This document shows, piece by piece, positions 1,337-57,580 of a DNA stretch of 57,580 bases (positions are counted from its first letter, which is position 1; each line of letters begins with the position of its first letter). The DNA is taken from positions 178,684,001 to 178,741,580 of the forward strand of contig CM097883.1 in NCBI GenBank assembly GCA_044892505.1, read 5' to 3'. This DNA comes from Schmidtea nova. Taxonomy: Eukaryota. Below the pieces are notes generated by a model. The model was not told the DNA's origin, made no database searches, and was given only the letters and a program-made list of their open reading frames with translations. A program made the position numbers and the translations under genes.

Positions 1337-4300
1337 ATGACAATTTATTATCGTTATAAGTTCAATGGCATTGTCTTTTATATTTGCCCTAAATGTGAGA
1401 CTTCCCAACCCATCTCCTATTCTGATTTTTATGCTCAACATCACGTTCATCTTTCGCAATTTTTTAAATCTAAAAAATTAATTTTTAAACTTAATTCTGA
1501 GACTTCAAACATCTCTTCTTTGAAAAAATCTGTTAAAGTTGATTTAACTAAGTCTTCAACTCGTTTAAATAATAAATTACTAAATAACTTATTAAATACT
1601 ACTAATATAGAAATAATTAATCAAAATAATAAAATTAAAAATATCAAAAAACGGCCTGCTGATACCATAAAATTTATTGCCCCCAAGAAAAATAAACCTG
1701 AAATAATTATTTTAAGCGACGACGATGAAATTGTTATAAATAATCAAATAGGGGGTTCAATTAATATAAATGATGAGCCTGTAATCGAAAAAGATTTAAA
1801 AGGATCTCGACGATCATTAACTTTTAACGTTGAGTCACATAATATAAATCAAATTGCTGTAACAGAAAAAATTGCTGAACGGTTAAATAAAGAAATACGA
1901 AAAATGGGGAATGTAAAAATTCAATTCGCGCTTAATATTCAGTTTGAAAAAGATGGGGTGTTAAAAAATGAGTTTTTATCTAATAATGCAGAAATTTTTT
2001 CAGATAATTTTTTAATAGAGGGTATTAGGAAATTAAACAATAAAATTGAAAATTTCACACAGATGGGTAGCGGCTGGATTGTAAACAAAATACGGGAAAT
2101 CCATTTTATTTTAACAAAGTATTCCACCATGAGTCGATTATCTGGACATGGACATTTTAAAACCCCAAAACCGTTATTAAATAAAAGGGCTATTATAAAT
2201 GTAGAAAACTCGGACGATTTATGTTTTATATATAGTGTTTTGGCTATTTTGAAACATGAATCCATCACAAATAATCATTGTGTAACTTCAAGTTATATTC
2301 CTTTTTTAAACGATTTAGTTTTTGACCCTATAGAGGACTGCCCCATGCAACTATGTAACATCCCAAAATTTGAGCATAATAACCCAGGCTTAGCCATTAA
2401 TGTGTTGTCATACAACCCTAAAGTAATTCATAATAATGATATTGATGTGGAAGATGATGACTATGTTCCTCATCATCCCCACTTGGAAATAATACATCGA
2501 ACAAAATTAAATAATTATAACCCCATTTATCTTTTATTATTAGAAAATGAGGGCATTTATCATTATACGGCAGTCATTAATCTACAAAGGTTAATGAACT
2601 GTCATAAAAATAATTTAATTAACAGTAGGATTCAATCTTTATGGTGTCCTAGATGTTTAAATGGTTTCCGTAGTCAGGAAACCTTTGACAAGCATTTTAA
2701 TTTATGTAGGAAGAATCAAATAGGAACTACCCTTTATAGTTTACCTAAAAATAAAAATCTAGAATTTGGGGATTTTTCGAAAACTGTAACCCCACCATTT
2801 GTAATATATGGCGACTTCGAGTCAATTTTACCAATTGATGACCGTTATCACCAAAAACATTTGCCGGTATCAGCAGGATTATTACTTTTAAATAATTTAA
2901 ATAATACAAAATCATATTTCGAATTTATCGGTATTGAATGCGTAATTCAATTTTTAAAGAAAGTGGAGGAAATTGCTGTCACAATTGTCCTGCCTTATTA
3001 CGACATTCATGGAAATGCTCCGTTGCAGACATTATCTTTTTCTGAGGAACAATCTTTTCGATCTTGCTTGAATTGTTTTCTTTGTAAGAAACCCATTAGG
3101 AATCGAATTAGGGCTTTTGATCACTTTTCTGGTAGATATCTTGGGGCAGCATGTAAAATCTGCAATAATACTAGACGACTTCGTAAACATTTGCCTGTAA
3201 TCTTTCATAATTTGAGAGGTTATGACCTACATCATATTTTGAAGTATGGTTTGTCTGATTTCCCCTTATGGGAATTAGATATTATTCCAACAACGACAGA
3301 GAAATTTATTTCTCTTATAGCTAATATTAATAAACTTGCTGTTAGGTTTATTGATAGTTATCAATTTGTAACAGCTTCCTTGGATAAAGCAGTAAAAACG
3401 CTGTCCGTTTTTCCTCTTACATCATCCGTTTTCACTGGCTCTATCATGAATTGTAAGGGCATTTTTCCATTTAATTTTGCTACCAGTCTTGAGATTTTAG
3501 AGAATACTTTTGAGTTGCCACCAATTTGGGAGGAAGTAACTGAGACTCAATATATAAAAGCTCAAGAAATCTGGCGCGAAAATAACTGTAGAAATTTACT
3601 TGACTACATGATGGTCTACCTAAAATTAGACGTATTTCTCCTCGCAGATTTTTTCCAACAATTCCGAGCTAAGTCTATTGCACACAATGACTTAGATCCT
3701 TTGAATTTTTATGGAATTCCCGGTATGTCATGGGCTTCAGCGCTCATGACATTAAAGGAACCTATAGAACTTCTTCAGGATATGGAAATGTATAATTTCT
3801 ACGGGGTGGATTGACATTTGTCAATAAACATTACGTTAAAGCGTCAGATGATACTGAACTTTTATATATAGATATCAATAATCTATATGGTTGGGCTCTT
3901 AGCCAAAGTCTTCCTTTCGGTGATTTCAGGTGGGTGCATAACAATCTTGAAGATATTTTGACTGAGTGCATGTCGACGGATATTGATGATCTTTCATATG
4001 GTTACACTATGGAAGTTGACATTAATATTCATGAAAACTTGCATGTGTTTTTGGATGATTTTCCTCTTGCTCCGGAAAAGATGTACCCACCATTCTCGAA
4101 AGTTGAGAAGTTAATGCTCACGCATTATCCGAAGTATAACTATGTTATACATTGGAGACTTCTCAAGATGTTTGTGTCTCTTGGGGCTAAAATTTCTAAA
4201 ATTCATAGAGCAATTAGATTTAAACAATCTAAAATCTTTAAGGATTATATCGACGCTAATACTGAGTTTAGAGCAAACTCGAGTAATGAACTTGACAAAA

Positions 4301-5163
4301 ATTACTTTAAGCTTTTGAATAACAGCCTATATGGTAAATCCGTCGAAAATCTGAAAAAACGGATGAATTTGAGATTATGTAATTCATCTGAAAAGATGAT
4401 TATATATTCTTCAAAGCCGTCTTTCAGAAAGTCCATCAAAATTGATGACGATCTGATTGCAGCACATCTGAATAAAGATTTAATATGTTTAGATAGACCT
4501 AGTTATATCGGTCAAACGGTACTAGATCTATCTAAACTACGGATGTATCAGCTGCAATATATTGAATTGCAGAAATATAGGGATCTCTTTGATTGCACTA
4601 TAGGCATTGTTGCTGGCGACACTGACTCGTTCTTTATTGAGGTTAAAAACTGTAAACTTACCACACTTTTACCGGCTATGATTTCAGATTGTCTTTTAGA
4701 TACATCTAACTATGATCGCGACCATTCCTTATATTCACGACGTCTTGACTCGGTTATAGGTAAATTTAAAGATGAAAGTAAGGGTAATGAATATAAGGAA
4801 TGGGTTTTCTTACGCCCGAAATGTTATAGCCTTCTTGGTGATGTTGAATTAAATAAAGCCAAGGGGATTCAACTTAAAGGAACTAACATCAATCATCAAT
4901 CTTATATTGATTGTTATCTTAATGACCGGATTTTCACTGTACCACAAACTCGTATAGGGACTAAGAATCACCAGCTCTTTACGATTAAAAATAATAAGAT
5001 TGCTCTTACTAATAACGACGATAAGCGCCATTGGGTTGGGAGGAATGAAAGTCTTGCATTTGGGCATTATTTAGGAGTCAATGACTGGACTAATGGCGAT
5101 AATAATCCACCCGAAGAATTGCCAGATCCTCAATCAATACAGATGGAACAAGATTCATGGTGA
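1337..5163 (+). pseudogene. Polinton/Maverick protein-primed family B DNA polymerase (pPolB) with a C2H2-like motif and an HNH/endonuclease VII-like insert; split by one frameshift at ~3801
   Basis: Exo motifs IYGDFES, FHNLRGYDLH and YLKLDV; pol motifs YIDINNLYG, KLLNNSLYGK, GDTDSF, RPKCY and KAKG; WCPRCLNGF...H motif; CFLC...DHFSGRYLGAACKICN. ORF1 ends MYNFYGVD*, while the -1 frame reads RGGLTFVNKHY from 3802. Confidence 0.93.
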
Positions 5164-23395: not shown

Positions 23396-25973
23396 CCCTG
23401 GAATGGCTTTAGGGGGAATCTATAATAAGTTAATAATGGGCCCAGCAACTTCTATAGGGTTCCCGCCTATAGTTACAGCTACTGCTGAAACAATAATAAT
23501 AATAATAATAATAATAATAATTTTTATTAATAATTTTATCTTTATATATTTATAAAGTAACCTTTTAATTTTATCTTTTTAAAAATTATAAATACATTTA
23601 AAAAATTCAGAAGGTTTTTTAAAAATATGTCGATTTTTTAATTTGTTGAAATTATTCATGTGCTTAAATATACCATTTTGATCTATAGTCTTTATATAAA
23701 AATTAAAATTTCTAAACTTGAAAAGAGTACGATATCAAAGAAAAAATATTAAAGATCTAAATGGCAAAATTGATATTTCATTGCATAAGTTAATAAAATA
23801 AATCATTCAGCCTATGCATTTATTTTAGAAATCGAAAGTAATAAGTATCTAAATGAAATTATTTCATGGATATATTTTTATATTTTTATACCTTTGTGAA
23901 TAATGTAAAAATATTAATATTAATAAAATACATCTGTAAATGAAACTTACAGCACTATGCTTGTAATAAATAAACATGAGCGTCCCATCCAGACTTAAGC
24001 TGCAGGAAGTNNNNNNNNNNNNNNNNNNNNNNNNNNNNNNNNNNNNNNNNNNNNNNNNNNNNNNNNNNNNNNNNNNNNNNNNNNNNNNNNNNNNNNNNNN
24101 NNNNNNNNNNNNNNNNNNNNNNNNNNNNNNNNNNNNNNNNNNNNNNNNNNNNNNNNNNNNNNNNNNNNNNNNNNNNNNNNNNNNNNNNNNNNNNNNNNNN
24201 NNNNNNNNNNNNNNNNNNNNNNNNNNNNNNNNNNNNNNNNNNNNNNNNNNNNNNNNNNNNNNNNNNNNNNNNNNNNNNNNNNNAATTTACTTCATCTAAA
24301 TATGGCCTCCATATTAATTCTGTTTCATTTTTTGTTTTTAAATTAAGAAGTTTTCTTTCATTTAATTCATTGACATAGCTCAACAGATCTGAAAGCATTA
24401 TATATAATTACAATACTGACCAATATTTTACCCTTTCCGATCCATTCATACGTTATGGTTTTATGAAGATTGCGACTCTGAAAAATATCTGGGAATGTAA
24501 ATTTGAAACCATAATTTATTTTCTTTCCATCTGAAAAATTATTCAAATTTATATGCAAATATTAAAAATATAAAAATATAATGTCAATTGTTTACTAATT
24601 TATTAAATTTTCAATACCCTTTAATTATTTCTTTAAGGATATCGAAAAAAGACAATGATTCTTGGGATAATTTATTCTTCACTGCAAATACCTTTCAGTT
24701 TTTGGGGGTTGAGATTTAATATTATATAATATAAATTATTTGGTTCACAAATTAATTATTGATTAAAATATTAATAAATTAAAGATGAACATTTATTAAA
24801 ATGACAATTTAAATCGTTTGAAATGAATTTGTTTACAAAAGATAAGAATTACTGTTTTTTATCTTATTCATTTATTTCGTTCACTGTAACAATGTCACTT
24901 TACATGATAATTTCCAAGCAAAATTTATCTTTTTTTAATATAAACAAATCTTTATTTATTTTATATTTAAAATTCCTTACCAATATTTTTAAAACTGACC
25001 TCTATATAGATAAAAATAAAGATAAAAATTCTTTAAAAAATTAGTACCGAAAATTTGTGTTGTACCGGAAAAATCTTTTGATCTATTTGTTTATAAGTAA
25101 AAATAATGAAATTGAAAAATAGAATAAATGTGACAAAAATTAAAAATCTTAATGATAAATAAAATAGAGTTCCTTACCCAGTAATATTTCTATGTAAAAA
25201 GCACTAAATATAAATAAAAAATAGACATTTTTTATTTAATAAAATAGCGAATTATTTTTAATCAAAGTACCATTAAAACAAATCGGAATTAATTAACATT
25301 TTAATAAAATGAGAAATTGATGTAATTAAAATATGAAAAATTAAACAATAATAATAATCATTATAGTGACATAATTACTGATGATAATACTAAAACAGGG
25401 TATTCAATGTGTATAAAACACAAAACCTTGCTTATCCATAATTAATTAATTAACTTAAATTTAAAATTAATATGTTCAAAAGAGAAAATAATCAAATAAG
25501 TTTATTGGGGCAACATGACAAAAAAAAAAAAAGCGATAAAATAATAAAACCTCTGTAACACTAATTGCGCAAGTGATTAATTAACGCGTTCGCTACCTTA
25601 GCCGTCCTAGAACGTAGCAACGGCGATTAAGTTACAATTTCTGCAATGTAATTTAAGCCACCTGCAAGGCAGCTAGCTGGCAATATGTAGGTCGAACTAA
25701 AATTGTGAAAATTGTGATAAATGTTATGTAATGCACAAGAATAGTGATCAATTCAAAGTTATTTGTAAGGAAATATGAAAAATGTTAATTTAGAAAATTT
25801 ATATGTAACTGACGAAAAGAATATATTATTGATATGTTGTATGAATTAAAATATATAAAAAAATAAACTATTTAATTATTGAAAAAAACATTTGTCGGAT
25901 GACTTATTTGTTTTTAACAAGTAAAGCTTTTGATTTTTTGTGATACCCAGTGCAAATCCCCAATAGCAGACTA

Positions 25974-26716
25974 CCGTCTTAACCCGAAAATAACACTATG
26001 GTGTTGTATTTGACTTTTTAAAAATTTTTGACTTCTTAAAACATTGAAGAAAAATTCAAATATAACACCATGGTTTTTTATTGAATATTTAAACATTAAT
26101 ATAATGCTAATTAACCAAGCATATGTATCCCAAAATACTGATCAATTTCTACCATTACCACAGTTTGAATTGGATTTGATACTAGATATTCAAATGAAGT
26201 TTTAGTATTTGCATTTTTTATTATAATGTTCCAATTTTTTTTAATGGACACAGCAAAAATCTCGTTTTCAGATGCAGGTATGTCATCATTCTGAATGTTT
26301 TCAAAATAATTAGAATCTACTAAATCAGATAATTCATGCAGAGACTGCATAAATAAAATTAATTGATTTTTATACTCCTTCCAAGTATTTTCAGCTTGAT
26401 TACCATATTTCTTGTGGTGTACACACATATAAAAGCTTGCAGTATTTGAATCTGGTAATTACCATTCTGGTGGTTGATATTTTTCTTCATTTATATCATC
26501 GTTTTCAGGTGTAACATACTCAGTTGCATATAATTCATTCCAGATAGTAATGTCAAAAGATGGCTGAAATAAAGCTTTTAATGGTGGATGGAGAATATAA
26601 ATAAAAGTTATTACATTAAAGTATTTTAAAACACCATGGTGTTATATTTGAATAAAACACGAGAGTAGTCTTATATTCAAACATAACACCATGGTGTTAT
26701 TTTCGGGTTAAGACGG
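25974..26716. mobile_element. Tc1/mariner-pogo superfamily non-autonomous element, 743 bp, with IR/DR-type ends
   Basis: TIRs CCGTCTTAACCCGAAAATAACAC(T/C)ATGGTGTT...; TA duplication at 25972-25973 and 26717-26718; the palindromic AACACCATGGTGTT motif occurs twice per end. Confidence 0.88.
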
Positions 26717-26991
26717 TAGTTTCGAGCTTTTGGCTCTCATCAGTGCTATGCAGGAGACGCGAAAATTTCTCTCCGCGCCAGGTAAGTATAAAACAAAGGT
26801 ACACTGGATAAAAATCACTTTAACAGATAATCTGTAACTTGCAAACATGTCGTATAAATTTCATTTTCGCCTCTGCCCACTAAAAGTGTTCAACAGAAAC
26901 TGTTTGCAAGCGCACCCGATTGCCTTAGCTTCATTATTTCAACTTTGTTTTATACTTACCTGGCGCGGAGAGAAATTTTCGAGTCTCCTGC

Positions 26992-27033
26992 ATAGCACTG
27001 ATGAGAGTTAAAAGCTCGAAACTAGTCTGCTAT
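26992..27033 (+). ncRNA. Minimal type I hammerhead ribozyme with an intact core
   Basis: Stem I ATAGCA/TGCTAT; CTGATGA 26998-27004; stem II GAGTT-AAA-AGCTC; GAAA 27018-27021; palindromic ACTAGT stem III; GTC cleavage triplet ending at 27027. Confidence 0.85.
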
Positions 27034-28503
27034 TGGGGATTTGCACTGGGTATCACAAAGTATCACAAGCTTTACTTATTTAATTATTATTATAAAAAGA
27101 ATATAGATGAGTATTTTTATTTATAAAACTACACGAATTTTCGGTACAACCGTTTCAAGTTTATATGGAAATATACACTTGAAAAAAGCTGGGCCAAAAA
27201 ATTGTAACTTTATCAAAAAATAATAATCTAGTAATTTTTAAAAATAATGAAAGAAACAAAAAGATCATTGGTGAAAATAAGTGATGTTAATGATAATTAA
27301 TTATTGTTATTTTCGAATTAAATTTAGTTTATTATAATAAATAAAATTATAATATTTTTTTGTAATATGAAATAACGAAATGTTTGTAGAAGGAAGTGTA
27401 TTATATTATTTAATACATGATATTCTTATAAATGATGCTATTCTTTGAATATTGTGGACAATTATTAAAATTTGATTTCTTTTAAATATTTAATGGATAG
27501 AAATAAAGTTAGAACGATACAGTTTTTCAGTTACAATTTTTCGAAAAGTTTTATGAAAAAAAAAGTTTAGAGAAATCTAATAAGCTTCTAAATATTAGGA
27601 AAATTAAAGATGTTTATGAAATATTAACCGTCACCTGTCCCTCAAAATAAGTAACAAAATGAAGTCTCTTGTATTAAAACAGACCCAAATATAGATTTAT
27701 ATTAAAAAATTATTTATTTTAATCTATTTAAGATGTTTATTAACATGCAATAATATTTAAAATTTCAGATTTTATTATCGTTTTTTATCTATAAATTAAA
27801 ATAATATCACTTGTTATATAAAATCTTTGAAAATCTTTCAGTTGTCATAAATACATTAATTTATAAATTTATAAAGATAAATACATTAATTTATCAAAAT
27901 TAATTGTTACAATATTACAAATATACAAAATTACAATATAAAAAATTAATTTAATTTTAATATAATTTCATACATCTAAACGCATATTATTTTGGAAAAT
28001 CTTCCAGTTGTCATAGATACAAAATGAAATTCATTTACATAAATTATAAAAATCACATTACTTAGTTAATTAGCATAATAAATAAATATCAAAAATATAA
28101 GTACAAATTAAAAAAAAATAGAATTAATTTACACAACAGCTTTATATATTATATATAGATATAAACCTATGAACACTGCTGTTTACAAAGATGCAACTTA
28201 GCTAAATATTTTTTCCTCGCAAATGAAATAATAGATTTATTAATTTTTTTCAAAATTTTAAGAGTAGTTTTGGGAAATATATTTTTAAGAAAAACCGTTA
28301 AAAGTATGAAATAGATAGAAACTAAATATTTCAAAGGTTTAACAAAATAACATGTATAACATTGAGAATCCATAAATAAGTTATATTTTCAGAAATTATC
28401 AGTTTGCAAATAAAACTGTTAATGATGCAATAATTAACATTTAATGTATAATAATTAGTAATAATAATAAACATTAATAAGGAATAACATAATCGCTATA
28501 ACA

Positions 28504-38005: not shown

Positions 38006-39946
38006 CAGGGTTATGAGCAAATATATTTAATTTTATGAATAAATATATTTAATTTTATGAATAAATATATTTAATTTTATGAATTAATATATTTAATTTT
38101 ATGAATAAATATATTTAATTTTATGAATTAATATATTTAATTTTATGAATTAATATATTTAATTTTATGAATCAATATATTTAATTTTATGAATTAATGT
38201 ATTTAATTTTATGAATTAATGTATTTAATTTTATGAATCAAAGTATTTAATTTTATAAAATATCAGGATTACTCCCTAATTTATGATTTCAGAGGAGCAA
38301 AACAGCAGCGAAGACGTCAGCCCGCAGATTACAGATAGTATACAACGTAAAAAACGAAAAACAATACGATTGGAGGATCTTAAACGAATAAGAAAGCACG
38401 TTGAAAAAAACGCAACAACGGCAGAAATTGCAGAATCAGAAGATATTTCCCTACAGACCGCATATAATCTGGTAAATAAAATCGGGGAAGGATTGCTTGA
38501 CGAAGAAATTGTGGGCAAAAAGAAGGGAAGGAAGAAAGAGCATTTAACAGAAGTTAAAAATAAACTCAATCAGATACTTTTAAGAGATTCTTCGTACACT
38601 CAGGCTGAGATGTCAGAATACTTAGAAGAGTTTCAAGTTTCGCGAACTCAAAGTGGAATTTCGCGGATTCTTAAAGACATGGGGTATACCAGAAAACGTC
38701 TTGTTTGTATTCCCGAGGAAAGAAACAGGGCCTCCACCATTGATTCTCGCCAGAACTTTGCGAGAGAAATTCAATTTATTGCAAATGAAAATTTAGTCTT
38801 CCTGGATGAAACAGGCACTAATTTACACCACACGCGCAATTATGGATATTCTCCAAAAAATGTAAAAGCAGTTAAAGTGGTAAAAGGCAACAAAGGTACT
38901 AACATCAGTTCCATGGTGGCGATAAATCATGCTGGTATAGTGGCATTTGAAATAAAGGCGGGATCTTTCGAAGGGGACACTTTTAAAATTTTTATTCAAG
39001 AAAAGCTTTTGCCACATTTTTTAAACAACCCAAACGATGTTTTGATAATGGACAATTGTAGTTTCCATCACAGAAGAGATGTAATTAATTTACTAAGAAC
39101 AAATTTTATTAATCATCGATTCCTTCCTCCATACTCTCCCCAGCTTAATCCGATTGAGGAATATTTCAGTCATTTGAAATCTGCTTTGAGTGCGATTCAT
39201 CCTCTACCGCAAAACAAAAGCGAGCTCATTCAGAGAATAAATACGCTTTTAACCGAGGAAGAAATTGATTTTAGCGGCTGGTTTAGAAACATGAGAAGAT
39301 ATGTTGACATGGCACTTGCAAGGAATTTATTCATTTAATAAAAAGCTTTAAGAGATTTATTTATTCATATTCTTAAAATTATATTCGAACAATTTCGTTT
39401 CAATTATTCATCGAGCAAAGTTTATAAACTGGCAACAGCATCGTTAATAATTTTTATTGCTACTTCAAAGAAGCTTCAAAAAAAATAAATGGAATTTTAA
39501 TTTTATTTGCAAAAATATATGAATTAAATAAAAATTAAGAATCGCAAATTCCCGAAAAACAATGAAATTCTACGTATTTAAGGCCTAATTCTAACTAGCC
39601 ACAATGCCCGTACATATTAAGCTGTGCAAATTTACTGTCTATGTATGTATCCTGCTTTTTAAAATTTTTGTATTTTCTTCAATTTTATAATTTGGGTAAA
39701 CGACATCAAATTAATTCATAAAATTAAATATATTAATTCATAAAATTAAATATATTAATTCATAAAATTAAATATATTAATTCATAAAATTAAATATATT
39801 TATTCATAAAATTAAATATATTTATTCATAAAATTAAATATATTTATTCATAAAATTAAATATATTAATTCATAAAATTAAATATATTTATTCATAAAAT
39901 TAAATATATTTATTCATAAAATTAAATATATTTGCTCATAACCCTG
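38006..39946 (+). mobile_element. Intact IS630/Tc1-like transposon, 1941 bp, with ~250-bp TIRs made of 23-bp tandem repeats
   Basis: Ends CAGGGTTATGAGCAAATATAT / ATATATTTGCTCATAACCCTG; TA at 38004-38005 and 39947-39948; 10 copies per arm of ATATTTAATTTTATGAAT(A/T)AAT. Confidence 0.95.
38283..39338 (+). CDS. DD34E transposase (IS630/Tc1, DDE_3-like), 351 aa, uninterrupted
   Basis: HTH-like N-terminus, MGYTRKR, VFLDETG, IMDNCSFH, LPPYSPQLNPIEE; 34 residues between the second D and E. Confidence 0.95.
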   Translation: MISEEQNSSEDVSPQITDSIQRKKRKTIRLEDLKRIRKHVEKNATTAEIAESEDISLQTAYNLVNKIGEGLLDEEIVGKKKGRKKEHLTEVKNKLNQILLRDSSYTQAEMSEYLEEFQVSRTQSGISRILKDMGYTRKRLVCIPEERNRASTIDSRQNFAREIQFIANENLVFLDETGTNLHHTRNYGYSPKNVKAVKVVKGNKGTNISSMVAINHAGIVAFEIKAGSFEGDTFKIFIQEKLLPHFLNNPNDVLIMDNCSFHHRRDVINLLRTNFINHRFLPPYSPQLNPIEEYFSHLKSALSAIHPLPQNKSELIQRINTLLTEEEIDFSGWFRNMRRYVDMALARNLFI

Positions 39947-54419: not shown

Positions 54420-56351
54420 TTCACCTTTGATCTTTTTTTATTATTATTATCAATAATTCTCATAATGACTATAGATCAAAATTTTTTTTTATAAACAATA
54501 ACACAATATTTCGGCACAGCCTTTATCAAGTGTGTATTTCTATCGTTATATTTACTTAATCCTAAATAGTAGCCTTAATTATTTTTTTAATATTTTATAA
54601 TGATTTTATTGGATGAAAAAATTTATTTTATTTTAATTTTTTTGTGCGAATTGAATGTTGATGGACGGTTTGTATTTTTTTATGAAAAAAGTCTCGGAAG
54701 CTAATCTTTGTAATGAATTTTTGAATCCCTCTTGTAGGATCTGGCATTTTGTTTCTTCTATAGATGGAGTTGTTTTATGTACTTTTTCCCAGTGTTCGTA
54801 ATAATTACTGGTTTTGATTTTAGTATGTTCATTAAGTCGGGTGCGAAAAGTTCTATGTGTTTCTCCTATGTAAGTAGCGTCACATTTTTGACAAGAAAGT
54901 TTATATACTATATTTTTGGAAAAGCAAAAGCATCGGGTTGTGGAACGACAAAGACATTTATGTTTGGAGATGTTGGAAATTGGTGGCTTTCGGAGTTGTG
55001 ATTTTAACGGTGCGGAGGTTATGAACGTTGGACGGATGTGGATAGGCAAATCTGTTTGATTAAAAATGTTGGTGATTTTGTTGGCTGTAGTGTCATTTAG
55101 GAAAGGTAATCTTAGATATGTTGTGTGTTTGTTATTGTTATTGTGTTTCTGGCGTTTTCTATTGTTGCGTTTATTGTGGTATGGTTCGTTAAGGAAGTGT
55201 TTCTTTACAAAGTCTTCAGGGTATCCATTTTGGAGGAATCGTATTTTGAAGTTTTCTAATGTTTCTTGTATTTTGTTTGCGTCTGAACAGTTTCTTATGG
55301 CTCTTTTTCTTTCTCCTATTAGTAATGCGATTTTGCGTTGAAGTGGAACGTGGCTTTTCCATGGGAGGATATGACCGCTATGTAAACCTTTAGAATATAG
55401 CTCGGTGTTTGCATTTAGTGTATCTTGGCCTTTTGTGAAACTTACCATGGTATCTAAAAACGGTATTTTACCTTCTGTGTTCGGTGTTTCAAAAGTAAAT
55501 TGTATGTTGGTGTTAGTAGAATTTGCGTGTGATAGGATTTGATTGAGAGGGATTGTGGAGACTATGAAGATGTCGTCGATGTATCGTTTCCAGAAAAGTA
55601 TTTTGTCCCCAAAAAAAGATATGATCTTAGATTCTATAAAGTTCATGTAGAAGATGGCTAAGATGGGAGAAAGGTTATTACCCATGGCTAATCCATGAAT
55701 TTGTTTGAATGGTTTTTCTTTAATTATGACAGTATCTGAATTTATTGCTAATTTTAGAAGTTCTATAAAGTCTTGTTTAGTTAAGTCTGCGAGGTCAGTA
55801 TTGGCTTTATGAGTTTCAAAGAAAGAAGCTGCGATATCGAAAATGTTATTCTCTCCGTGAAGAGGAATAGATCCGTAAAGATTGGAAACGTCAAGAGATC
55901 CCCAGAAGTACTGTTGTCCTGAGTTTAACGGAAGAGACGTATTTGTAATTTCGGAGACGAATTCAGTTGTGTTTTTAAGATGAGAAGGAACCAAAGGCAA
56001 AAGTGTTTTTAGAATTTCTGAAAGAACTTTAGAAAGTGTTGTGGAAGGAGTGTCAACTGCAGATACAAGAGGTCTACCTTTTAAAGGACTTTTGTGATCT
56101 TTAGGTAACATAGTCATATTACTAGGTAAAGGCTCACTGCAGTTGCATTTTAAAAGTAAATCTTTGATTTGAAGGTTAATTTGTTTATTTGCAAGTGTTG
56201 AAAGTTTCTTATTGTATAAAATCTGAGTCGATGCAGGTAAGATTATTTTGTTTATCGGTTCATAGTTCGAGAGATGTTCTTCAAATAGAGTATTGTATTG
56301 TTCTGTGTCAAGAGCAATTAGTCGATTTGTTTTATCTGATGGAAGAATTGT
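54420..56351 (-). mobile_element. Penelope-like retroelement copy A: 5'-truncated, with 3' pLTR
   Basis: Continuous RT-GIY-YIG frame plus a downstream terminal repeat shared with 31055-31225 and 34961-35100. Confidence 0.95.
54633..56351 (-). CDS. PLE reverse transcriptase + GIY-YIG endonuclease (5'-truncated; the frame is open upstream of the called Met at 56117)
   Basis: TILPSDKTNRLIALD, LPKDHK, SLDVSNLYG, GLAMGNNLSP, RYIDDIF, IPFLD, NGYP, Cys-rich linker HKCLC...RCFC and IVYKLSCQKCDATYIGETHRTFRTRLNEH. No stops. Confidence 0.95.
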   Translation of the reverse strand, partial: TILPSDKTNRLIALDTEQYNTLFEEHLSNYEPINKIILPASTQILYNKKLSTLANKQINLQIKDLLLKCNCSEPLPSNMTMLPKDHKSPLKGRPLVSAVDTPSTTLSKVLSEILKTLLPLVPSHLKNTTEFVSEITNTSLPLNSGQQYFWGSLDVSNLYGSIPLHGENNIFDIAASFFETHKANTDLADLTKQDFIELLKLAINSDTVIIKEKPFKQIHGLAMGNNLSPILAIFYMNFIESKIISFFGDKILFWKRYIDDIFIVSTIPLNQILSHANSTNTNIQFTFETPNTEGKIPFLDTMVSFTKGQDTLNANTELYSKGLHSGHILPWKSHVPLQRKIALLIGERKRAIRNCSDANKIQETLENFKIRFLQNGYPEDFVKKHFLNEPYHNKRNNRKRQKHNNNNKHTTYLRLPFLNDTTANKITNIFNQTDLPIHIRPTFITSAPLKSQLRKPPISNISKHKCLCRSTTRCFCFSKNIVYKLSCQKCDATYIGETHRTFRTRLNEHTKIKTSNYYEHWEKVHKTTPSIEETKCQILQEGFKNSLQRLASETFFIKKYKPSINIQFAQKN

Positions 56352-57580
56352 GGGTAATAACCTTGGGTAATAACCTTTCTCCCATCTTAGCCATCTTCTA
56401 CATGAACTTTATAGAATCTAAGATCATATCTTTTTTTGGGGACAAAATACTTTTCTGGAAACGATACATCGACGACATCTTCATAGTCTCCACAATCCCT
56501 CTCAATCAAATCCTATCACACGCAAATTCTACTAACACCAACATACAATTTACTTTTGAAACACCGAACACAGAAGGTAAAATACCGTTTTTAGATACCA
56601 TGGTAAGTTTCACAAAAGGCCAAGATACACTAAATGCAAACACCGAGCTATATTCTAAAGGTTTACATAGCGGTCATATCCTCCCATGGAAAAGCCACGT
56701 TCCACTTCAACGCAAAATCGCATTACTAATAGGAGAAAGAAAAAGAGCCATAAGAAACTGTTCAGACGCAAACAAAATACAAGAAACATTAGAAAACTTC
56801 AAAATACGATTCCTCCAAAATGGATACCCTGAAGACTTTGTAAAGAAACACTTCCTTAACGAACCATACCACAATAAACGCAACAATAGAAAACGCCAGA
56901 AACACAATAACAATAACAAACACACAACATATCTAAGATTACCTTTCCTAAATGACACTACAGCCAACAAAATCACCAACATTTTTAATCAAACAGATTT
57001 GCCTATCCACATCCGTCCAACGTTCATAACCTCCGCACCGTTAAAATCACAACTCCGAAAGCCACCAATTTCCAACATCTCCAAACATAAATGTCTTTGT
57101 CGTTCCACAACCCGATGCTTTTGCTTTTCCAAAAATATAGTATATAAACTTTCTTGTCAAAAATGTGACGCTACTTACATAGGAGAAACACATAGAACTT
57201 TTCGCACCCGACTTAATGAACATACTAAAATCAAAACCAGTAATTATTACGAACACTGGGAAAAAGTACATAAAACAACTCCATCTATAGAAGAAACAAA
57301 ATGCCAGATCCTACAAGAGGGATTCAAAAATTCATTACAAAGATTAGCTTCCGAGACTTTTTTCATAAAAAAATACAAACCGTCCATCAACATTCAATTC
57401 GCACAAAAAAATTAAAATAAAATAAATTTTTTCATCCAATAAAATCATTATAAAATATTAAAAAAATAATTAAGGCTACTATTTAGGATTAAGTAAATAT
57501 AACGATAGAAATACACACTTGATAAAGGCTGTGCCGAAATATTGTGTTATTGTTTATAAAAAAAAATTTTGATCTATAGT
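56352..57580 (+). mobile_element. Penelope-like retroelement copy B, more 5'-truncated (starts at GNNLSP), inverted relative to copy A; runs off the window edge
   Basis: Translation from GNNLSP to the stop at 57415 is identical to copy A, and the 3' region mirrors 54468-54632. The N-terminal ~65 aa of ORF 56189-57415 are just the antisense of copy A. Confidence 0.95.
57511..57550 (+). ncRNA. Variant minimal hammerhead ribozyme in the pLTR (mirror copy at 54498-54537, minus strand)
   Basis: Stem I ACAC/GTGT (extendable ATA/TAT with a bulge); core TTGATAA (U3...A8); extra A; stem II GGC-TGT-GCC; GAAA; palindromic AATATT stem III; AUU triplet. Confidence 0.7.

What the first reader, a model, noticed from the sequence alone, without database searches (positions are those of the whole stretch)
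26943..27077. U1-snRNA-5'-end-like motif coupled to an intact hammerhead ribozyme
Seen: ATACTTACCTGGCGC (26952-26966), then a hairpin GGAGA...TCTCC, then a complete minimal hammerhead 26 nt downstream, and both arms of the inverted repeat keep this module. Established: AUACUUACCUGG is the conserved U1 5' end that reads splice donors. From memory, the match continues GCG as in invertebrate U1; this needs verifying. U1 stem-loop I and the Sm site are absent. Inference: a small non-autonomous ribozyme element that either captured the U1 5' end or carries a perfect antisense donor (CCAG|GTAAGTAT). Its RNA could mask 5' splice sites or recruit U1. I do not know of this combination in described retrozymes or PLE terminal repeats.
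Basis: partly seen in the sequence, partly recalled or inferred. Interest (0 to 1): 0.78.

Follow-up and report, generated by a model that had tools for sequence, protein, structure and literature searches.

The report
Hammerhead retrozyme copies with U1 fragment
Two dead, head-to-head copies of a very abundant ~380-base self-cleaving-ribozyme repeat (an animal "retrozyme") each carry the first 17 bases of planarian U1 splicing RNA, most likely a captured fragment locked in a hairpin and not a working U1 mimic.

Summary
The motif at 26952-26966, a GC hairpin and an intact type-I hammerhead (26992-33, cut after 27027) are present, with a mirror copy on the minus strand.

The "inverted-repeat element" is really two copies of a highly repeated ~380-nt non-coding unit, joined 5'-end to 5'-end. 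The 144-nt "spacer" belongs to the left copy. That copy's hammerhead is split by a 743-bp TA-flanked MITE (25974-26716) inserted in the ribozyme's loop III.

The match to U1 runs 17 nt. It is identical to Schmidtea mediterranea U1A1, six bases beyond the splice-site-reading part. No other U1 feature is present: no stem-loop I or II loops and no Sm site.

No variant reaching 10% of reads was listed in the motif across the contigs laid, but the flanks are just as uniform. In most copies an imperfect donor-like arm just upstream pairs with the motif, and bases 11-17 sit in a second hairpin. No RNA data cover the unit.

Best reading: a Penelope-mobilised retrozyme with a captured U1 fragment, and no evidence that it affects splicing. 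The scan found this family before on other DNA of this genome; my tests agree with those follow-ups.

The parts
26943..27083 (+). Right copy: 5'-truncated copy of the retrozyme unit (parts a and b). It may run on to about 27098.
   Evidence: Inverted-repeat pairs I1 and I2. Summed contig depth falls about 100-fold after 27073. Alignment to the left copy.
26952..26968 (+). U1-like 17-mer, identical to nt 1-17 of S. mediterranea U1A1
   Evidence: S1 Table of PMC6312358
26962..26985 (+). GC hairpin that takes in U1-like nt 11-17. It is weakened here by an A at 26982; the left copy has C at that position.
   Evidence: Folds
26992..27033 (+). Intact type-I hammerhead: helix I 6 bp, helix II 4 bp with one G:U pair, helix III 2 bp inside the palindrome ACUAGU. 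Cleavage after 27027.
26719..26942 (-). Left copy, 5' portion: part d (26823-26942), shortened part e (26799-26822), and part a with the U1-like motif and the hammerhead 5' half (26719-26798)
   Evidence: Joints and loose ends of family contigs give the order a-b-c-d-e-a; sequences
26773..26789 (-). U1-like 17-mer of the left copy. On the + strand it reads as a perfect donor, CCAG|GTAAGTAT.
25879..25973 (-). Left copy, 3' portion (part b). It includes the hammerhead 3' half: GTC and helix I 3' strand at 25963-25971.
   Evidence: Inverted-repeat pair I2; junction analysis; restored alignment
25974..26716 (.). 743-bp MITE inserted later into the TA of hammerhead loop III. It has perfect 23-nt terminal inverted repeats, and TA is duplicated at 25972-73 and 26717-18.
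   Evidence: Family contigs join b to a without it, and contigs of runs X5/X6 end at its borders.

Best explanation
This locus holds two dead copies of one abundant, non-coding, roughly 380-nt hammerhead repeat, an animal non-LTR retrozyme. The left copy (minus strand, 26942 down to 25879) is nearly unit length. The right copy (plus strand, from 26943) is a 5'-truncated copy inserted in the opposite direction, so the two 5' ends abut. This is the architecture published for Penelope-like-element insertions, and a real PLE pair in the same window has it too. A TA-targeting MITE later split the left ribozyme.

Inferred life cycle, taken from the literature on this class and not shown here: tandem units are transcribed. 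Neighbouring hammerheads pair through the palindromic helix III (ACUAGU) and cut after GUC. The monomers are ligated to circles and copied back into DNA by a PLE reverse transcriptase.

The U1-like 17-mer is a fixed feature of the family. It most likely came from a host U1 RNA or gene, by template switching or by capture of sequence lying between two ribozymes. It persists as one arm of a hairpin next to the ribozyme. It is probably a passenger or structural piece, not a splice-site binder.
For: Family and unit order. Thousands of contigs from two DNA runs lie on 25850-25972 and 26717-27073, including the 'spacer'. Their joints and loose ends give the circular order a-b-c-d-e-a.

Non-coding. 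No ORF of 90 aa or more lies outside the MITE, and only ORFs of 54 aa or fewer are in the unit.

Hammerhead. Both cores are intact once the MITE is removed. The shape matches the published canonical metazoan type I: helix I 6 bp, helix II 4 bp, helix III 1-2 bp with a palindromic loop, active as a dimer (PMC4209133).

Architecture. An inverted 5'-truncated copy at the 5' end is described as typical of PLE insertions (PMC8557442). PLE protein extends both target strands in vitro (PMC11167929). In this window two RT ORFs that are 97% identical lie head-to-head. Their best PDB match is telomerase RT, weakly (E 0.011), and the C-terminal 120 aa weakly match the GIY-YIG region of UvrC.

U1. The motif is identical to nt 1-17 of S. 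mediterranea U1A1, the most highly expressed variant. The six bases beyond the splice-site-reading part would match by chance about 1 time in 4096.

Sequestration. With the upstream arm present in most copies, P(unpaired) is 0.13 or less for 10 of the first 11 bases, and nt 11-17 sit in a second hairpin.
Against: No RNA evidence exists: no listed RNA run holds the unit, and the 'RNA?' contigs cover only the MITE.

The host's own U1 could not be read here. The comparison is with a congener's U1, if earlier notes naming the genome Schmidtea nova are right.

No variant at 10% or more was listed in the U1-like arm, whereas its donor-like partner arm is imperfect. That asymmetry could mean constraint on the U1-like arm. 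The family is too uniform to tell, because the flanking bases show no listed variants either.

In the local left copy the partner arm is deleted, and nt 1-10 are predicted free.

Copy number is inferred from summed contig depth, which is not a count.
Confidence: 0.72

Rival explanations
1. Working U1 mimic: the ribozyme RNA exposes a U1-like 5' part that pairs with host 5' splice sites and masks them, or competes with U1.
For: The motif matches the splice-site-reading bases of U1 exactly, and no variant at 10% or more was listed in it. In a copy lacking the upstream arm, nt 1-10 are predicted unpaired.
Against: In the usual unit context the motif is paired, as it is in the right copy alone. 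There is no Sm site and no stem-loop I or II loops. The motif is internal to the unit and not at a known RNA 5' end. No expression data exist.
Confidence: 0.06
2. Not U1-derived: the hairpin is an inverted duplication of a 5' splice-site-like sequence, for example a relic of the 5'-UTR intron that PLEs carry next to their hammerhead. Under this reading the identity to U1 beyond 11 nt is coincidence, helped by selection for the GC hairpin.
For: In D. virilis Penelope an intron ends at helix I of the hammerhead (PMC4209133). A donor-like arm lies about 20 nt upstream on the same strand, and bases GCGCGG pair locally with CGCG(U)C.
Against: The sense-strand arm reads CAG|GAAAAG and lacks the GT. 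It is the imperfect arm, while the U1-like arm is perfect. Six extra identical bases have a chance of about 2e-4.
Confidence: 0.12
3. Promoter and start-site capture: the unit took up a U1 gene's upstream promoter together with nt 1-17. Each unit would then start a Pol II snRNA-type transcript at ATAC, and the hammerhead would release a U1-headed RNA of about 76 nt.
For: The match starts exactly at U1 nt 1. About 70 nt of unit sequence (part e) precedes it in tandem copies. A transcript starting there would lack the masking arm, like the fold. Kojima raised the unsolved question of how snRNA-headed SINEs are transcribed (PMC4494074).
Against: I found no planarian snRNA promoter motif or U1 flank to compare with. 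The 12 nt upstream of ATAC belong to the inverted duplication. No RNA ends are available.
Confidence: 0.07

Closest known systems
Animal non-LTR retrozymes (Cervera and de la Pena 2020, PMC7229834; Li et al. 2026 preprint, 10.64898/2026.07.22.740005)
   Same: Short non-coding unit of a few hundred nt. Type-I hammerhead with a tiny palindromic helix III. Tandem, circularly permuted arrangement. Very high copy number. Lives alongside PLEs. Platyhelminths are listed among phyla that have such repeats.
   Different: It carries 17 nt identical to the U1 5' end. No U1 or snRNA link is mentioned in the retrozyme and PLE papers I searched. Circular RNA was not shown here.
Penelope-like element terminal repeats (pLTRs) with hammerheads (Cervera and de la Pena 2014, PMC4209133; Craig et al. 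2021, PMC8557442)
   Same: A hammerhead in the repeat, and an insertion architecture with an inverted 5'-truncated copy at the 5' end.
   Different: No RT/GIY-YIG ORF is attached. The PLE in this window has a different, variant hammerhead-like motif and no U1-like 12-mer.
SINEU: SINEs with U1/U2 snRNA-derived heads (Kojima 2015, PMC4494074)
   Same: A non-autonomous retroelement that has taken up part of a spliceosomal snRNA. The proposed route is template switching or 5' transduction.
   Different: SINEU heads are long snRNA segments at the 5' end, with a poly(A) tail and mobilisation by a non-LTR element. Here only 17 nt are present, inside a ribozyme repeat without poly(A).
U1 snRNA genes of Schmidtea (Schmidt et al. 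2018, PMC6312358)
   Same: Nucleotides 1-17 are identical to U1A1.
   Different: Everything after nt 17 differs. The GATCAC and CATTGCAC loops and the Sm site are absent.

Membership tests
Animal non-LTR retrozyme | Type-I hammerhead with conserved core and short palindromic helix III | tested here: met
   Core CUGAUGA...GAAA...GUC, helix I 6 bp, helix II 4 bp, helix III 2 bp within ACUAGU. The Rfam HH9 match is only sub-threshold.
Animal non-LTR retrozyme | Short unit (about 170-400 nt) in tandem, circularly permuted copies | tested here: met
   Contig joints and loose ends give the order a-b-c-d-e-a. The summed parts come to about 380 nt. This is inferred from fragments, not from a full array read here.
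Animal non-LTR retrozyme | No protein-coding capacity | tested here: met
   Only ORFs of 54 aa or fewer overlap the unit.
Animal non-LTR retrozyme | Expressed as self-cleaved linear and circular RNA | not testable with these tools
   No RNA run holds the unit. All runs laid were contigs, which cannot show RNA ends.
Penelope-like element (autonomous) terminal repeat | Repeat flanks an RT plus GIY-YIG ORF | tested here: not met
   No such ORF lies next to 25879-27100.
U1 snRNA gene or pseudogene | 5' splice-site recognition sequence at nt 1-11 | tested here: met
   Exact, and identity continues to nt 17 of U1A1.
U1 snRNA gene or pseudogene | Stem-loop I and II loops and the Sm site | tested here: not met
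   GATCAC, CATTGCAC and AATTTTTG(G) are absent from the unit on both strands.
SINEU-type snRNA-headed SINE | snRNA-derived head at the 5' end, LINE-type tail with poly(A) | tested here: not met
   The 17-mer is internal to the permuted unit, and neither copy ends in a poly(A) tract.

The most novel reading that the evidence does not exclude
The 17 nt of U1 were captured together with a U1 gene promoter, which would be part e of the unit. Tandem units would then launch capped Pol II transcripts starting at ATAC. The hammerhead would cut these about 76 nt downstream, releasing a small U1-headed RNA whose first 10 bases are free to pair with 5' splice sites.
Probability: 0.06. Interest if true: 0.8.

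Novelty: new member of a known kind. Interest (0 to 1): 0.34.

Why it matters
For the known part, this is a clear invertebrate example of a retrozyme inserted with the head-to-head signature of Penelope-like elements. That supports the idea, argued so far mainly for vertebrates, that PLEs move retrozymes.

A host snRNA fragment fixed in a ribozyme repeat is not described in the papers I could search. It is a small parallel to snRNA-headed SINEs.

It would matter much more if the fragment were functional, as a start site or as a splice-site binder. In that case a repeat with thousands of copies could influence splicing in a stem-cell-rich animal whose U1 variants are already known to differ between cell types.

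Tried and rejected
- Rfam at gathering thresholds found nothing in the window.
- Metagenome and viral contig scans for 'U1 13-mer plus hammerhead' and for the family's ribozyme core gave 0 hits. So no copies outside this genome were obtained, and no cross-species test was possible.
- RNA evidence: the only possible RNA runs (X5, X6, another organism) cover the MITE alone.
- Looking up the window's Tc1 transposase, to name the organism, found nothing on record.
- I searched for a planarian snRNA promoter motif to test promoter capture and found none in the literature held.
Only the first 17 nt and three short functional motifs were compared.
- I did not build a family consensus. The canonical unit is described only through the 30-letter loose-end consensuses.
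- A weak resemblance of ATTTGCAC and CATAGCAC to the U1 stem-loop II loop, and of TTTTAGTGGG to the Sm region, was judged chance (9 of 18 bases in the best ungapped register).

Full report
**What is in the sequence**

On the plus strand, ATACTTACCTGGCGC sits at 26952-26966. A GC-rich hairpin follows, then a hammerhead:
- helix I: ATAGCA (26992-97) pairs with TGCTAT (27028-33)
- core: CTGATGA at 26998-27004
- helix II: a 4-bp stem, GAGT/GCTC
- GAAA at 27018-21
- helix III: 2 bp with a two-base loop
- GTC ends at 27027

The 12-mer ATACTTACCTGG occurs twice in the window, once per strand, against 0.16 expected. The hammerhead core pattern also occurs twice, against 0.04 expected. Rfam finds nothing at gathering thresholds. 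In a small search it gives a sub-threshold Hammerhead_HH9 match (22.4 bits, E 0.0094). The low score fits the near absence of helix III.

**Anatomy of the locus**

The continuation of the right arm (27023-27083) has its mirror image at 25913-25973, 745 bases to the left of the left arm.

Between them lies a 743-bp element (25974-26716). It has perfect 23-nt terminal inverted repeats, which extend to 44 nt at 93%. TA is duplicated on both sides, so it is a TA-targeting MITE. It landed in the TA of the hammerhead's loop III. With it removed, the left hammerhead is complete and its core matches the right one. Family contigs that join the two halves directly confirm the insertion. So do contigs from another organism that end exactly at the MITE borders.

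**The family**

I laid contigs from two DNA runs on 25850-27350:
- Thousands of contigs cover 25850-25972 and 26717-27073, including the 144-nt "spacer".
- Summed depth there is two to three orders of magnitude above the flank. This is not a copy count.
- Joints and loose ends give one circular order in ribozyme sense. Part a holds the U1-like motif and the hammerhead 5' half. Then come b, a 16-nt piece c, d (the "spacer", 26823-26942 read on the minus strand), about 70 nt of e, and a again.
- The parts add up to about 380 nt.

So the unit is a tandem-type, circularly permuted, non-coding repeat. Only ORFs of 54 aa or fewer overlap it.

In this locus the left copy (minus strand) runs d, a shortened e, a, [MITE], b. 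That is 319 nt from 26942 down to 25879. The right copy (plus strand, from 26943) holds only a and part of b. Their 5' ends abut, with a shared TTTCAA/TTGAAA at the junction, and their 3' ends point outward.

**Why head-to-head**

An inverted 5'-truncated copy at the 5' end is described as a typical Penelope-like-element (PLE) insertion structure (PMC8557442). A PLE protein cleaves and extends both target strands in vitro (PMC11167929).

The same window holds a real example. Two RT ORFs, 54633-56117 (-) and 56189-57415 (+), are 97% identical and lie head-to-head. Their best solved-structure match is telomerase RT, weakly (E 0.011). The C-terminal 120 aa weakly match the GIY-YIG region of UvrC. 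Each ORF is followed by a variant hammerhead-like motif.

The retrozyme pair therefore bears the mark of PLE machinery. This agrees with the 2026 preprint that derives animal retrozymes from PLEs.

**The ribozyme**

Its shape is the published canonical metazoan type I: helix I 6 bp, helix II 4 bp, helix III 1-2 bp with a small palindromic loop. That form is inefficient as a monomer and active when two copies pair (PMC4209133). Here ACUAGU is a perfect palindrome.

Two ribozymes on opposite strands cannot pair in that way, and one of them is broken. This locus is best seen as a relic.

**The U1 question**

S1 Table of Schmidt et al. 2018 (PMC6312358) gives the S. mediterranea U1 variants. U1A1, the most highly expressed, begins ATACTTACCTGGCGCGG and then TTTAACC. 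The element has the same 17 bases and then AGAGAAA. U1B1 agrees for 14 bases.

The match therefore goes six bases beyond the splice-site-reading part, which has a chance of about 1 in 4096. It then stops. The stem-loop I and II loop motifs and the Sm site are absent from the unit.

Earlier notes of this scan name the genome Schmidtea nova. I could not check that, or read its own U1, so "the host's own U1" remains a lead.

**Conservation**

Among the contigs laid, no alternative base reaching 10% was listed within 26943-27007 or in the left arm. The nearest listed variants are 27008/27009, where most copies have CC as in the left arm, and 27061. On that evidence the motif is conserved, but so is everything around it. 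The family is too uniform to show special constraint on the motif.

**Structure**

In most copies part a is preceded by a donor-like but imperfect arm, CAGGAAAAGTAT.... This comes from the reverse complement of the loose end at 26798. Folding that arm with part a gives:
- a hairpin that pairs the U1-like 11-mer, with P(unpaired) of 0.13 or less for 10 of the 11 bases
- a second hairpin that takes in nt 11-17
- then the hammerhead

The sense arm lacks GT, so it is not a usable donor. In the right copy alone the motif pairs with a downstream stretch instead (z-score only -1.3). In the left copy the upstream arm is deleted and nt 1-10 are predicted free. A transcript across both copies would fold into a long, near-perfect hairpin.

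**Reading**

The most likely account is a retrozyme family that once took up the first 17 nt of U1. The route could have been template switching, or capture of host sequence lying between two ribozymes. The family keeps the fragment as one arm of the stem next to the ribozyme.

I rate the rivals as follows:
- a working U1 mimic: about 0.06
- a splice-site-derived hairpin that matches U1 by coincidence: about 0.12
- capture of a U1 promoter and start site: about 0.07

No paper I could search links U1 to retrozymes or PLE repeats. The nearest parallel is the snRNA-headed SINEU (PMC4494074).

**Limits**
- No RNA evidence was available.
- No copies from other species were found.
- The full U1 was not aligned and no family consensus was built, for lack of referenced sequences.
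- The scan had already met this family on other DNA of this genome. My independent tests (17-nt identity, hairpin masking, unit size, abundance) agree with those follow-ups. They add the locus anatomy, the MITE and the PLE-type architecture.

Noticed in passing
window 25974-26716: 743-bp MITE with perfect 23-nt terminal inverted repeats (CCGTCTTAACCC...) and a TA duplication. It has subterminal palindromes (AACACCATGGTGTT) that draw weak miRNA-precursor hits in Rfam. Its 105-aa ORF has no Pfam match. Related copies at 90-95% identity occur in contigs of a second organism's possible RNA runs.
   Followed up: partly
window 54440-57580: Head-to-head pair of 5'-truncated Penelope-like elements. 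The RT ORFs are 97% identical, with a weak best PDB match to telomerase RT and a GIY-YIG-like C-terminus (VYKL...YIGET). Each is followed about 95 nt downstream of its stop codon by a variant hammerhead-like motif (CTTGATAAAGG...CCGAAAT). The right copy runs off the window end.
   Followed up: partly
window 25869-25880 and 27077-27088: A 12-nt direct repeat, TATTTAATTATT, flanks the composite head-to-head insertion. It may be a target-site duplication or priming microhomology. However, the right-hand copy of the repeat also resembles the family's own AT-rich tail, so this is unresolved.
   Followed up: partly
window 27051-27069 (and 25927-25946 on the other strand): Both local copies share a 9-10-nt tandem duplication (TATCACAAAG TATCACAAG). 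Most family contigs lack it: 169 contigs leave the alignment at 27060. The two copies therefore come from the same subfamily, possibly from one insertion event.
   Followed up: no
window 3811-5163 and 38283-39338: A Polinton-type family-B DNA polymerase ORF and a Tc1-like DDE_3 transposase ORF. The window is largely transposon debris.
   Followed up: no
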